DNA of 64,000 bases. Source: Saccostrea echinata (Eukaryota). Below the pieces are notes generated by a model. The model had not been told where the DNA came from and did no database searches. It saw only the letters and a list, made by a program, of their open reading frames with translations. The stretch is from positions 7,626,001-7,690,000 of the forward strand of contig NW_026889803.1 of assembly GCF_033153115.1 (NCBI RefSeq), given 5' to 3'. Positions 14,588 to 36,115 of the stretch are shown here, piece after piece; the stretch's first letter is position 1; each line of letters opens with the position of its first letter. A program made the translations under genes and the position numbers.

Positions 14588-14942
14588 CTATAAGGAAGAA
14601 CCATATTTAAAGAATGCAAATACATGTGGAGGGGGTGGTGTATATATGTATATACATGTAATTCGATTTTGGGCTTTATTTGCAACTTATTGTTAAAATA
14701 TCAGGTGGCTTTGCATACATACCACAACTATAAAATGTTACTAAATATAGGGGAAGAAATTATGTTAGAGCTGTAGCTGTGCCAAATTCAAGTGAGTAAA
14801 TCAAATTGTTAAACTGTATACCTAAAAGCATAAAGAAAAGTAAATAGTGATGATCGAATAGTGTATAAAAAACCCATTGATTTCTGATATTATAAAAAAT
14901 CGTAATTTTATCTTTTAATTATAACTAATGTGCTTAGACTAC

Positions 14943-15094
14943 NNNNNNNNNNNNNNNNNNNNNNNNNNNNNNNNNNNNNNNNNNNNNNNNNNNNNNNNNN
15001 NNNNNNNNNNNNNNNNNNNNNNNNNNNNNNNNNNNNNNNNNNNNNNNNNNNNNNNNNNNNNNNNNNNNNNNNNNNNNNNNNNNNNNNNNNNNNN
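14943..15094. other. Assembly gap (N run)
   Basis: 152 consecutive N. Confidence 1.
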
Positions 15095-15302
15095 ACGGGT
15101 CGTGCACGTTCACGCGGCCCGAAGCCGTGAGGTGCTCAACCTTAAAACATGTAATGAAATTATTCAGTTGTATAATCTACTCTATCATATAATAGCGTCT
15201 TTGTTATATATTAATATACATAAATTATCGAGACATTTAACAGTTTCTCCTCACCTGTATCACCGATATCCGAGTGATTATTACGTACCTTGCCCAGCAA
15301 AT

Positions 15303-15784
15303 TGTTTACACCGGAAGTAGTTGGTTGCTACAACGATATTAAGCCAATCTTGGCAACCGTTTGCAGAGAACGTAGAAGGGGGCAAAATCACACAATCAAA
15401 TAACTTTTTAAAGAAATTCTGGCTACAACTAGTGAACAAAAAAATGTTTGTTTTAAACGCGCATCTTTTTTTTATGTAGCTGGTAAAATTAATAACTGAA
15501 TACCGAATAAAATATCAATATAATACTTTGACTTGAGTAAGCTACATCAACATATATAATCATTTACAATAAATACACAAAAAGAGAAAATAATGAAGAG
15601 AAGCAATGTTCATTAAGCTTAGAAGCGAAATAAAAACATGTCTCTGTTTTCATGCAACACAAAATGTAGATCGGGTTCGATATTACATAGGTAGATAAGT
15701 ACGCATGCGTTGAATTCGGAAACTCCAAAATCTCCGCGAAAATTCGGCTGGTTGAAGGTTGCCAGACGTTATACTGATATTGAG
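15303..15784. promoter_or_regulatory. Bidirectional promoter region between the minus-strand gene and GMPS, including GMPS non-coding exon 1 (~15720-15784)
   Basis: Forkhead TGTTTAC 15303-15309, ETS CCGGAAGT 15311-15318, X-box-like GTTGCTACAACGAT 15324-15337, CCAAT 15344-15348, TGGCAAC 15351-15357. NRF1-like ACGCATGCGT 15701-15710 is followed by a CpG-rich segment and donor GAG|GTAAAA at 15784. Confidence 0.55.
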
Positions 15785-33397: not shown

Positions 33398-35563
33398 ATG
33401 CTGTCCCCCGGTATCGTACTGGGGTTCTTGGTGATTTTTGGCTCCTCGATAGGAACCTTTGGGGATTACTACGGTTCCTTTGACGATTATTATTACTATA
33501 ACGATGACGAACCTCGAGAGATTTCAAAGGAGCAAATCAAAGGTGAAAAATAACATACATTAGAAAATTCAGATATAACAGTTTTTTTACTCCGATCTTT
33601 TGCTTGACATTCAAAGATAGTTATTTCATTAGTTAAAATATTTTACTCCACTCATCTTTGTGGAGAATATTATATATTATATTTTTGGCTTCGTTTTCAT
33701 ATTTTTTAGCAATACAGTCCGTTATGAATGCAGTGCTTAATCAAAACATCGAAAGAGCTGATAACAGATCGTCGAAAGCGCTCGAGACTCAGTCGAGGCG
33801 GTGTGTCAACTCGGTGGAAATGTTTTCCAAATCTTGCGAAGCAGTAAATTGCGGAGGGTAAGTACACTACAAAATAAAGGAAATAAAAAGAATGGTAAAG
33901 ATATTAATGAGTCAAATATTCATTTATTAATAATAATAAAAAATATTAGTGATAAGTCTTGAGAAAAAAATATATTTAGCTTTGAACATTTTCACCATTG
34001 TACTCATTTCAGTGGGAATATATTCGATAAAATAAAAGGAGGGATATCGAAACTAACGAAAAAGGTTATTGGAAAGGCCAAAAAATTCTTGAAGAAGGGA
34101 CTGAAGGCGATCCTCGGGTTTAGAGTCCGCCGGGTGTTCAAAGGAATAAGGAAAGGCATCCGAAAACTGACGAGAAAAATTCGCAGAATAGTCCGACTTC
34201 CACGGGTTAGGGTGCGCCGGGCACTCAGAAGGATACGGAGGGGTGTCCGGAAAATCAGTAGGAAGATCCGCAGAATAGTTCGCCGTGTACGGGTGAGAGT
34301 GCGACTACCACGTGTAAGAATCCGAATCCGTAGGAGGTGGCGAAGTATGTTAACTGATGAAATAAATTTGAATCTCAGTATTTTAAAGAAAATGCTATAG
34401 ATCTCCGATATCTAGACCAAAAGATGATAACGTTTAATGAAAGAATAATTACTTGTTATTTCATCGTCATAATGTTTATTTTATTAATTTTCTTTGTGTT
34501 GGATGATGCCAATATTAATTCTTTTAGATAAAAATAATTGCCCATCATTGTACATTAAAATCAATATTGGATAATCCGAAAAACACCTTTCAAATCATTA
34601 TTTTGCAGGATGGGGAAAGAAAAAGAGATCGACATGCAGTGGGTGTAAACAGATGTCCAGCTTGAGTGAGGAACAACTCGTGGAAAGAAGTACTTTGATT
34701 TTATGTGATTTTATTAATATCAAAAATGCATTGCATTCACTGATAAGATCACCGATAAAGTTTGCCCAAAATTATTAAAAAGAAGTGAAACGGAGACAAA
34801 TTTTACATTAGAAAGTGACTGATTTTAGTTTACTCCAGATTGCAACGAAATACACAGAACTGTCACCTTTGAGTGTTGAAGAATTTTATCTAATTTTGAA
34901 CTGTAGGCCAAACATGGTATATTTAAGGTCTTTCGTCTTCTAACGAAGACCTTCTTGTTATTCTTAGGTTTCTTTTTCACTTTTAATATTACTATTATTT
35001 TTTTTTCTTACTGATTTTGTGCACGCGATTTCTCATTATCTATTATTTTTTTTTAAAACAATGTGAGATAAACTGAAATCATTTCCAAGTTCTTATACTT
35101 GTAGTGTGTCCCTATCTGAAGAAAGCTGAGCAGAGAGCGACCAGAACCATGACTTTCCTATCTAAATTGATATCGGAAATGGAAGAAGGATATCCCGCAA
35201 TTCAAAAAGTGGGTATTTGTTTTATAAACACATCTAAACTGGAAGTCATTGAAAATGTTTAATCTTATTACATTCTAAAAAGCTGTTTATATTAATAAAT
35301 CATATTACATGTAGTAAGTTTTTTTTTGTTATTTTTGTCTATACTGAAGAGACATCTTATTTAAAGAAACAATCTTATCGTTGGAGCCTTTTTACTTGCA
35401 GATTTTGCATTATGAAAACACATCAGATGAAGCAAAAGTAACGTTGGCCGTAAAGGAAGGGACAACAAATTATGTGGTACGGAATTTCAGCAGAAAAGGT
35501 AGTAGAGGAGCAGGGGTTATCCTAGGCCAGTACATTTTCAGGAGAGCAACGGCTGGTTCTTAA
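33398..35563 (+). CDS. Secreted 323-aa precursor with a hypercationic Lys/Arg amphipathic insert; putative remote clusterin homologue / antimicrobial-peptide precursor
   Basis: Exons 33398-33542, 33710-33857, 34013-34344, 34609-34689, 35105-35208, 35402-35563 (972 nt, GT-AG, intron phases 1,2,1,1,0, no stops). Signal peptide MLSPGIVLGFLVIFGSSIGTFG, acidic Tyr-rich DYYGSFDDYYYYNDDE, C-x10-C-x4-C, 112-aa K/R insert, W-G-KKKR, C-x2-C-x15-C. AATAAA at 35594. Confidence 0.88.
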
Positions 35564-35774
35564 AGGCAATGTGAAAAAATAGATCTCAAGTAAAATAAAA
35601 ATGAAATTGAATTTCATTCCATGTGTTTATTTGTTTTGGCGATATAAAAAAAACTGATAATTTATACATGTAAGTTAGAAAGTGGTGTTGGGGTGGGGTT
35701 AAAATATGCACCAAGAGACATAGTCTCTTTCTTGATATTAATAATGATAATGAATATGAATAGCTGCGATGTTG

Positions 35775-36115
35775 ATGGATTTATCAAAGGCTTTTGCTTG
35801 CCTTACTCATGATTTGTTGCTTTTAAAACTCAAAGCATATGGCTTGTCCAAACCAGTATTACATTTGCTAAATGGCTATTATCAAGTAAGAAACAATATC
35901 TAAAGATTGGTCCTCATTTAAGTGAAATACTGGATATTCTGAAAGATGCACCATGAGGGTTCTATTCTTGGACCTGTATTTTTCAATATTTTTATTTACG
36001 ACTTGTTCTTCTTTAATTGTATAAAACTGTATCCTCTATGATTATGCAGATGACAATACCCTAGCAAAATCTCATAAACTGCTACAAGGAGTTATAAAAT
36101 CCTTACAGGAGGACA
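35775..36115 (+). mobile_element. Degenerate CR1/L2-type LINE reverse-transcriptase fragment
   Basis: MDLSKAFxCLTHDLLLLKLKAYGLS ... GSILGPVFFNIFIYDLFFF ... LYDYADDNTL, with frameshifts. Confidence 0.8.

What the first reader, a model, noticed from the sequence alone, without database searches (positions are those of the whole stretch)
33398..35563. The scaffold around the cationic arm looks like a remote invertebrate clusterin, including intron positions
Comparison with human clusterin recalled from memory. (a) ISKEQIKAIQSVMNAVLNQNIERA aligns ungapped with VSDNELQEMSNQGSKYVNKEIQNA. (b) C-x10-C opens the first Cys cluster in both, and C-x2-C...C closes the second, followed by a long helix. (c) The C-terminus AIQKILHY / AKVTLAV / TNYVV / NFSRKG / GAGVILGQYIFRR has the same strand-strand-strand-helix order as YLRVTTV / TEVVVKL / ITVTV / EVSRKN / METVAEKALQEYRKK. 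(d) Both have a convertase site in the linker between the Cys clusters. (e) The phase-1 intron in QIK-A, the phase-1 intron in the codon before the last Cys, and the phase-0 intron in the first C-terminal strand match my recollection of CLU introns at ELQ-E, SV-D-C and VTT|VAS. Clusterin is usually regarded as chordate-restricted. Inference: an ancient bilaterian clusterin fold with a shorter coiled coil and 3 instead of 5 disulfides, whose cleavable loop has been repurposed as a cationic effector. Sequence identity is low, so this is a hypothesis.
Basis: partly seen in the sequence, partly recalled or inferred. Interest (0 to 1): 0.92.

Follow-up and report, generated by a model that had tools for sequence, protein, structure and literature searches.

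The report
Oyster secreted protein with clusterin-like layout
This is a real, uncharacterised oyster gene for a secreted protein in which a disulfide-stapled helical frame carries a hugely positively charged arm; the frame is laid out like vertebrate clusterin, but no test here shows that the two are related by descent.

Summary
A six-exon GT-AG gene (33398-35563, +) encodes a 323-aa secreted protein. Its parts, in order: signal peptide, acidic Tyr-rich stretch, long helix, three Cys, a +54 arm (one exon), WGKKKR, three Cys, helix, three strands, helix.

It is single-copy here. Uncharacterised homologues exist in Saccostrea, Magallana, Crassostrea and Pinctada.

Descent from clusterin is not shown:
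- The Pfam Clusterin profile hits nothing, in the exons, eight family members or the whole genome.
- A family profile finds no clusterin among PDB sequences.

The layout resemblance is real but statistically weak:
- Both scores lie within the background for helical models.

CLU intron positions could not be checked.

Verdict: a new pteriomorph-bivalve family with clusterin-like architecture and probably a clusterin-like two-chain maturation; homology about 25% likely. The scan noted this same stretch twice (s1-810948, s1-810956), not other DNA.

The parts
33398..33542 (+). Exon 1. It holds the start codon, the signal peptide (about 33398-33454), an acidic Tyr-rich stretch (33455-33526, net charge -6) and the start of the long N-terminal helix.
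   Evidence: for the translation. for segment charges; 37/49 identity to the Saccostrea orthologue P0004.
33543..33709 (+). Intron 1, 167 nt, GT-AG, phase 1, inside the Ala49 codon (QIK-A).
33710..33857 (+). Exon 2: the N-terminal long helix and the first Cys cluster, Cys80, Cys91 and Cys96 (33802-33852; C-x10-C-x4-C).
   Evidence: The equivalent stretch in the AlphaFold2 model of P0004 is helix 41-90 at pLDDT 84-89. The exon is single-copy in the genome.
33858..34012 (+). Intron 2, 155 nt, GT-AG, phase 2, directly after the first Cys cluster.
   Evidence: The partly unspliced Crassostrea-type transcripts P0012 and P0013 diverge from the spliced forms at or within about two residues of the aligned position.
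34013..34344 (+). Exon 3: the polycationic arm. With its flanking residues it has 35 Arg and 20 Lys and a net charge of +54. The first part is a Lys-rich amphipathic helix. The rest is RVRVRLPRV-type repeats.
   Evidence: The arm is unique in the genome. It is modelled as low-confidence helices and coil.
34345..34608 (+). Intron 3, 264 nt, GT-AG, phase 1 (Arg209 codon).
   Evidence: The split Saccostrea gene model P0005 ends at this position.
34609..34689 (+). Exon 4. It holds W-G-KKKR (34611-34628), a Gly amidation donor followed by a polybasic convertase site. It also holds the CxxC that opens the second Cys cluster (Cys218 and Cys221, 34635-34646).
   Evidence: W, G, KKR, S and both Cys are invariant in 8 homologues.
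34690..35104 (+). Intron 4, 415 nt, GT-AG, phase 1, inside the Met236 codon directly before the last Cys.
   Evidence: P0012 and P0013 diverge at the same position.
35105..35208 (+). Exon 5: the last Cys (Cys237, 35107-35109) and the long C-terminal helix.
   Evidence: The equivalent in the model is helix 244-268 of P0004 at pLDDT 82-89.
35209..35401 (+). Intron 5, 193 nt, GT-AG, phase 0, between Lys270 and Ile271, inside the first C-terminal strand.
35402..35563 (+). Exon 6: three beta-strands, the C-terminal helix and the stop codon.
   Evidence: The model has strands 273-280, 286-293 and 296-303 and helix 310-328 of P0004. The exon is single-copy. It is 77% identical to the Saccostrea protein P0001.
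35594..35599 (+). AATAAA polyadenylation signal, 31 nt after the stop codon.

Best explanation
The locus is a genuine single-copy gene of a previously undescribed secreted-protein family of pteriomorph bivalves (true oysters and pearl oysters).

The N-terminal helix and the C-terminal part (short helices, long helix, three-stranded sheet, last helix) fold together into one discontinuous frame. Up to three disulfides between two three-Cys clusters probably staple it.

The +54 arm, encoded by a single exon, is an excursion between the two clusters. Inferred mechanism:
1. A convertase cuts at the invariant KKKR just before the second cluster.
2. The preceding Gly is used to amidate the new C-terminus.
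3. The result is a two-chain, disulfide-linked protein whose cationic tail is free at one end. Internal R-x-R-R sites may release it further.
4. The tail is the active part, most likely membrane-active host defence.

This is the working principle of clusterin: a cut between two Cys clusters, chains held antiparallel by disulfides, and function residing in the liberated tails. The predicted architecture is also laid out like clusterin. However, the family is not demonstrably a member of the clusterin family. The likeness is either convergent or too remote for the tests available here.

Shown: the gene model, family distribution, conserved motifs, predicted fold elements and the ranking of clusterin in fold searches. 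Inferred: disulfide pairing, cleavage, amidation and function.
For: Gene and family:
- Clean GT-AG model with one open frame.
- All six exons are collinear with the 329-aa NCBI protein XP_062621121.1 of Saccostrea cucullata, at 74-91% identity per exon.
- Further homologues occur in Magallana gigas and Crassostrea virginica. There are also ~1.1-1.3 kb Logan contigs that carry the whole ORF, so they are spliced transcripts; one represents 57 member sequences.
- The Pinctada imbricata protein P0014 aligns to the oyster profile at hhalign probability 99.2, E 5.6e-20, across both Cys clusters.
- The invariant columns include all six Cys and the W-G-K-K-R-S residues of the WGKKKRS motif.
- Intron positions 2, 3 and 4 recur in other species.

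Fold:
- In the AlphaFold2 model of P0004 the frame has pLDDT 71-90 and the arm 40-67.
- Confidence of the C-terminal part falls from about 85 to 63 when it is folded without the N-terminal helix. This fits one discontinuous domain.

Clusterin likeness:
- Foldseek ranks clusterin 15-16 of 350,542 chains.
- Clusterin anatomy was taken from PMC12527946.

No family assignment:
- No Pfam family reaches its threshold for any member.
- There is no literature on these proteins.
Against: - Expression here is therefore inferred from relatives.
- Disulfide pairing, cleavage and amidation are motif-based inferences.
- A two-chain complex prediction gave no verdict.
- The arm-to-frame packing in the model is low-confidence.
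Confidence: 0.55

Rival explanations
1. True remote homologue. The family descends from the same ancestral gene as vertebrate clusterin. It kept the three disulfides nearest the long helices, shortened the coiled coil, and replaced the hydrophobic tails with a cationic arm.
For: - Clusterin was named a priori. It then appeared as the top natural end-to-end structural match for the full model, and again for the C-terminal piece.
- The order of elements is collinear: helix, Cys cluster, central excursion with a convertase site, Cys cluster with short helices, long helix, three strands, last helix (against PMC12527946).
- Crassostrea-type members have C-x10-C-x2-C and C-x2-C. By my own knowledge of UniProt P10909 disulfides (102-313, 113-305, 116-302), these equal the spacings of the three outermost clusterin pairs.
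- In both genes an intron falls shortly after the signal peptide and before the first helix (PMC6403191).
Against: - The Pfam Clusterin HMM finds nothing at E <= 10 in the exons, in 8 family members, or in the six-frame genome.
- Neither the family profile nor single members find clusterin among PDB sequences.
- Cys spacings drift inside the family: x10/x12, x2/x4, x11/x15/x16.
- There are six Cys, not ten.
- The cleavage site is at a different place relative to the second cluster.
- Structural scores are within background.
- An intron just after a signal peptide is common in genes for secreted proteins (general knowledge).
- The family was found only in pteriomorph bivalves.
Confidence: 0.25
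2. Ordinary antimicrobial-peptide precursor. The flanks are disposable pro-regions, an acidic N-terminal neutraliser and a C-terminal propeptide. They are removed during maturation and have no role as a frame. The clusterin likeness is coincidence between generic elements: a helical hairpin and a small beta-beta-beta-alpha module.
For: - The arm looks like known cationic peptides. Its best PDB sequence match is LL-37, though not significant (E 0.31).
- It has strong helical amphipathicity and several R-x-[KR]-R sites.
- The N-terminal stretch is acidic.
- Small alpha/beta modules of many unrelated proteins match the C-terminus equally well.
Against: - The flanks are well conserved: six invariant Cys and many invariant residues in the C-terminal 100 aa across oysters.
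- Together they are predicted with pLDDT 71-90, mostly above 80, and lose confidence when separated.
- No conserved dibasic site separates the first Cys cluster from the arm. The arm would therefore stay attached to chain 1 unless cut internally.
Confidence: 0.15
3. Gene-model artefact: the exons do not belong to one expressed gene in this species.
For: No RNA evidence could be obtained for this genome.
Against: - There are five canonical introns, one open frame and a polyA signal.
- The exons are fully collinear with an independently annotated orthologue and with spliced transcript contigs of relatives.
Confidence: 0.02

Closest known systems
Clusterin / apolipoprotein J (Pfam PF01093; PDB 7ZET, 7ZEU)
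   Same: - Both are secreted.
- Both have a long N-terminal helix leading into a Cys cluster.
- Both have a central excursion with a convertase site.
- Both have a second Cys cluster on short helices, then a long return helix.
- Both end in a three-stranded sheet plus a final helix.
- By inference, maturation gives two antiparallel disulfide-linked chains whose freed tail carries the activity.
- Clusterin is the best natural end-to-end structural match.
   Different: - There is no sequence or profile similarity.
- There are 3+3 Cys instead of 5+5.
- The protein is 323 aa against 449, with shorter helices.
- The central region is a +54 Arg/Lys arm rather than Phe-rich hydrophobic tails.
- The cleavage site abuts the second Cys cluster.
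- The window protein has three N-x-S/T sequons, against six N-glycans attached in clusterin.
- The family is known only from pteriomorph bivalves.
Cathelicidin-type host-defence precursors (conserved folded pro-domain plus variable cationic peptide; LL-37)
   Same: - A conserved, disulfide-containing carrier is joined to a fast-evolving, highly cationic amphipathic peptide released by proteolysis.
- The arm gives its best, non-significant, PDB sequence match to LL-37.
   Different: - There is no cathelin (or any other Pfam) domain.
- The cationic part is internal, between two halves of the carrier, not C-terminal.
- The arm is three to four times longer and contains RVRVRLPRV-type repeats.
Small alpha-beta-beta-beta-alpha modules (dsRBD-like; Dicer dsRBD, Mon1-Ccz1 longin-type units)
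   Different: - None of the matches is significant.
- The oyster module is extracellular and follows a Cys-stapled helix.
- No RNA-binding or GEF context exists.

Membership tests
Clusterin (PF01093 / IPR000753) | Significant match to the family profile | tested here: not met
   - hmmscan finds no Clusterin hit at E <= 10 for the six exons, P0004/P0001/P0002 or all 8 members of A1.
- The six-frame search of the whole 923-Mb genome with PF01093 gives no match at E <= 10. That tool's control genomes are prokaryotic, so the search has no positive control.
- HHpred-level profile-profile comparison could not be run, because no clusterin sequences were obtainable by reference.
Clusterin (PF01093 / IPR000753) | Five conserved interchain disulfides from two five-Cys clusters | tested here: not met
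   There are six Cys in two clusters of three. The spacing partly coincides with the three outer clusterin pairs, but it varies within the bivalve family. Five disulfides for clusterin: PMC12527946.
Clusterin (PF01093 / IPR000753) | Discontinuous three-domain fold: coiled-coil bundle, disulfide domain, alpha/beta roll-like domain | tested here: inconclusive
   - The AlphaFold2 model has the same elements in the same order.
- All of this is within the background stated by the tool.
Clusterin (PF01093 / IPR000753) | Furin-type cleavage between the Cys clusters giving two disulfide-linked chains | tested here: met
   Met as a sequence motif only. KKKR is invariant in 8 homologues and lies between the clusters. 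Actual cleavage is not testable here, and its position relative to the second cluster differs from clusterin's 227/228 site.
Clusterin (PF01093 / IPR000753) | Disordered, Phe-rich hydrophobic tails flanking the cleavage site (the client-binding elements) | tested here: not met
   The region is 35 Arg + 20 Lys with net charge +54. Clusterin tails are described in PMC12527946.
Clusterin (PF01093 / IPR000753) | Shared intron positions and phases with CLU/CLUL1 | not testable with these tools
   The window introns are defined. For CLU, only 'nine exons, signal peptide in exon 2, next ATG in exon 3' could be verified (PMC6403191). No annotated vertebrate gene structure is reachable.
Cathelicidin (cathelin pro-domain) | Cathelin-like domain N-terminal to a C-terminal cationic peptide | tested here: not met
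   There is no Pfam hit to a cathelin domain, and the cationic part is internal.

The most novel reading that the evidence does not exclude
The family is a genuine protostome branch of the clusterin superfamily. Clusterin's cut-in-the-middle, disulfide-linked two-chain design would then date back to the bilaterian ancestor. In oysters the liberated tails were converted from hydrophobic client-binding segments into a +54 membrane-active effector.
Probability: 0.22. Interest if true: 0.85.

Novelty: new variant of a known kind. Interest (0 to 1): 0.5.

Why it matters
Clusterin is a major extracellular chaperone with a strong link to Alzheimer disease. To my knowledge it has no accepted invertebrate relatives.

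If the oyster family proved homologous, it would give the family a deep origin. It would also provide a natural experiment in which the functional tails were swapped for a different chemistry.

Even if the likeness is convergent, the finding stands. This is an undescribed, conserved pteriomorph-bivalve family in commercially important oysters. It presents an extreme polycationic peptide from inside a folded, disulfide-stapled carrier, a precursor design unlike known antimicrobial-peptide precursors. Its maturation, tissue expression and activity are directly testable.

Tried and rejected
- Exon-by-exon searches. Pfam gave nothing. PDB sequence searches with exons 2 and 6 gave no clusterin, only chance hits. 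The word-index protein search with exon 6 found no candidate, because its length window excludes full-length kin.
- Exhaustive phmmer with exon 6 gave only P0001 and P0002, plus a bacterial repeat protein (P0003, E 2.2e-5) that I take for a chance or composition hit.
- The search from the Pinctada C-terminal region found only itself.
- Both ESM Atlas look-ups gave no usable feature hit, and their structure hits were unrelated.
- Own-genome searches with exons 2, 3 and 6 and with P0014 found no paralogue, only weak Arg-rich noise.
- Two-chain complex prediction (P0004 33-100 against 222-329) gave no verdict. It is not evidence either way.
- Literature searches for the repeat motif, the locus names and 'clusterin + Crassostrea' found nothing relevant.
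- Joined step left out. The spliced window protein was never sent to any database, fold or family tool. It was only translated, indexed and once compared with the window itself inside local scripts. All full-length searches and folds used the natural orthologue P0004 and its relatives instead.
Full report
**What is there**

Between 33398 and 35563 on the + strand lie six exons joined by five canonical GT-AG introns. They give one open frame of 323 codons (codon coordinates).

The product reads, in order:
- a signal peptide;
- an acidic Tyr-rich stretch (net charge -6);
- a long amphipathic helix ending in three Cys (C-x10-C-x4-C);
- a 110-codon single-exon arm with 35 Arg and 20 Lys (net +54);
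- W-G-KKKR-S;
- three more Cys (C-x2-C-x15-C);
- a second long helix;
- a C-terminal 55 residues.

An AATAAA follows the stop codon by 31 nt. The phase-1 intron lies in the Ala49 codon. The second phase-1 intron lies in the Met236 codon, just before the last Cys. The phase-0 intron lies between Lys270 and Ile271. Two further introns (phase 2 and phase 1) bracket the arm exon.

**Is the gene real, and whose is it?**

Exons 2, 3 and 6 each occur once in the 923-Mb assembly. The window holds no second copy.

An exhaustive phmmer search with exon 6 found a 100-aa Saccostrea cucullata protein. Its 90%-identity cluster also holds the full-length 329-aa XP_062621121.1 (P0004). All six window exons are collinear with P0004 at 74-91% identity. 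The window therefore comes from an oyster related to, but not identical with, S. cucullata.

Searching with P0004 found several homologues, none with a Pfam domain or a name:
- uncharacterised proteins of Magallana gigas and Crassostrea virginica;
- several 1.1-1.3 kb Logan contigs that carry the whole ORF uninterrupted, i.e. spliced mRNAs, one representing 57 member sequences;
- a Pinctada imbricata protein with the same layout.

The Pinctada protein aligns to the oyster profile with hhalign probability 99.2 and E 5.6e-20. The alignment runs across the N-terminal helix, both Cys clusters and the arm. Part of that score must come from the repetitive arm.

By NCBI taxonomy the family thus spans Ostreidae and Pteriidae. 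Two partly unspliced transcripts and one split gene model break off at or within about two residues of the window's introns 2, 4 and 3. Those intron positions are therefore conserved within the family.

**Conservation**

In the eight-sequence alignment, the six Cys, the W-G-K-K-R-S residues of the WGKKKRS motif and scattered frame residues are invariant. Among the seven oyster sequences, much of the C-terminal 100 residues is invariant too.

The arm keeps its character but changes length through gain and loss of RLPRVRV-type repeats. The Cys spacings are not fixed:
- first gap x10 in oysters, x12 in Pinctada;
- second gap x2 in Crassostrea, Magallana and Pinctada, x4 in Saccostrea and this window;
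- last gap x11 to x16.

**Predicted fold**

I did not send the joined window protein to any external tool. I folded the natural orthologue P0004 with the family alignment.

AlphaFold2 gives mean pLDDT 67.7. The frame (residues 33-100 and 222-329) scores 71-90 and the arm 40-67. The elements are:
- helix 41-90, which carries the first two Cys, with the third in the loop just after it;
- two arm helices;
- a disordered Arg/Val repeat region;
- short helices 225-231 and 235-242 around the second cluster;
- helix 244-268;
- strands 273-280, 286-293 and 296-303;
- helix 310-328.

The model aligns over about 140 residues at 4.6 Å to single-chain designed four-helix bundles. In the model, therefore, the frame helices and arm helices form an up-down bundle. 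Folded alone, the C-terminal 100 residues (P0001) drop to pLDDT 63. This fits a domain that needs the N-terminal helix.

**The clusterin question: sequence**

The Pfam Clusterin profile finds nothing at E <= 10 in the exons, in P0004, or in any of the eight members. It also finds nothing in a six-frame scan of the whole genome; that scan has no positive control.

A family HMM and single members find no clusterin chain among 177,635 PDB sequences at E <= 10. The best hit is LL-37 against the arm, at E 0.31.

Roughly 14 bits is expected by chance for proteins of these sizes. At sequence level there is therefore no evidence of relationship.

**The clusterin question: structure**

The published structure describes these features (PMC12527946):
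- a coiled-coil bundle (alpha2, alpha6, alpha10, plus alpha7);
- a disulfide domain in which five interchain bridges tie alpha3 to short helices alpha8, eta3 and alpha9;
- an alpha/beta domain in which a three-stranded antiparallel sheet wraps the last helix and is flanked by alpha1;
- furin cleavage at 227/228, liberating two hydrophobic tails that carry the activity.

The oyster model has the same order of elements.

With the full model:
- Foldseek finds nothing significant, but places 7zet_A and 7zeu_D at ranks 15-16 of 350,542 chains (E 1.8).
- In the second look at Foldseek's shortlist, the two clusterin crystal forms rank 5 and 6, behind four designed bundles. They are the only listed chains aligned over the whole frame, cap included, with so many residues.

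With the C-terminal 100-residue model:
- Clusterin is absent from the top 50 of both broad searches.
- It is level with other helix-sheet-helix modules.

**Points that weaken the specific matches**

- The C-x10-C-x2-C and C-x2-C spacings of Crassostrea-type members equal those of the three outer clusterin disulfides. This rests on my own knowledge of UniProt P10909, not on a tool result. The spacings drift within the bivalve family and differ in this window.
- The convertase site lies two residues before the second cluster. In clusterin, again by my own knowledge of its Cys positions, the cut lies about 57 residues before that cluster.
- The central region is chemically opposite to clusterin's Phe-rich tails.
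- An intron shortly after the signal peptide is common in secreted-protein genes. For CLU I could verify only nine exons, with the signal peptide in exon 2 and the next ATG in exon 3 (PMC6403191). Codon-level comparison remains undone.

**How it most likely works**

Shown: a conserved secreted protein whose two ends are predicted to fold together, while a single-exon polycationic arm loops out between two Cys clusters.

Inferred:
- An antiparallel disulfide ladder forms between the clusters.
- A convertase cuts at the invariant KKKR, and the preceding Gly is used for amidation. This yields a disulfide-linked two-chain protein with the arm attached by its N-terminal end.
- Conserved internal R-x-R-R sites may give further release.
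- The arm is membrane-active in host defence. It has high helical hydrophobic moments in the Lys-rich part and Arg/Val alternation further on.
- The acidic Tyr-rich N-terminus may mask charge during transport.

This is the clusterin principle with a different payload. A two-chain complex prediction returned no verdict and is not used.

**Verdict**

I put true homology at about 0.2-0.25. The robust result is a new, unnamed pteriomorph-bivalve family. No paper in the searchable library mentions these loci or the repeat motif. The same stretch was noted twice by the scan (s1-810948 and s1-810956). The second note concerns the arm, and my numbers agree with it.

Noticed in passing
window 14943-15094: A run of 152 N (assembly gap or masked stretch). 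It sits inside the 130-aa ORF listed at 14928-15320. It was left untouched.
   Followed up: no
window 35769-36100 (+): Just downstream of the gene lie short ORFs that look like a decayed reverse-transcriptase fragment of a non-LTR element. The only support is a weak RVT_1 match (E 0.11).
   Followed up: partly
window 62116-63666 (-): An uninterrupted 516-aa ORF matches the secretin-family 7-transmembrane receptor domain (7tm_2, E 9.3e-11). It is probably a single-exon or terminal-exon GPCR gene.
   Followed up: partly
P0004, P0005 and P0001 (Saccostrea cucullata): S. cucullata carries the gene twice in its assembly. One copy is intact on an 11-kb contig. The other, on a 932-kb contig, is annotated as two separate genes split at intron 3. 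This may be a haplotig plus a mis-split model, or a real duplicate.
   Followed up: partly
P0009 and P0011 versus P0006 and P0010: The RLPRVRV-type repeat block of the arm differs by about 45-50 residues between closely related Crassostrea/Magallana proteins. The arm therefore evolves by repeat gain and loss while the frame stays fixed.
   Followed up: partly
P0002 (JGI/IMG metagenome contig, 1301 bp): A 51-aa ORF is 47% identical to exon 6. It is presumably the last exon of a homologue from bivalve DNA caught in an environmental sample.
   Followed up: no
P0003: A 1420-aa bacterial-type repeat protein matched exon 6 at E 2.2e-5 in five repeats. I treated it as a composition or chance match and did not examine it further.
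   Followed up: no
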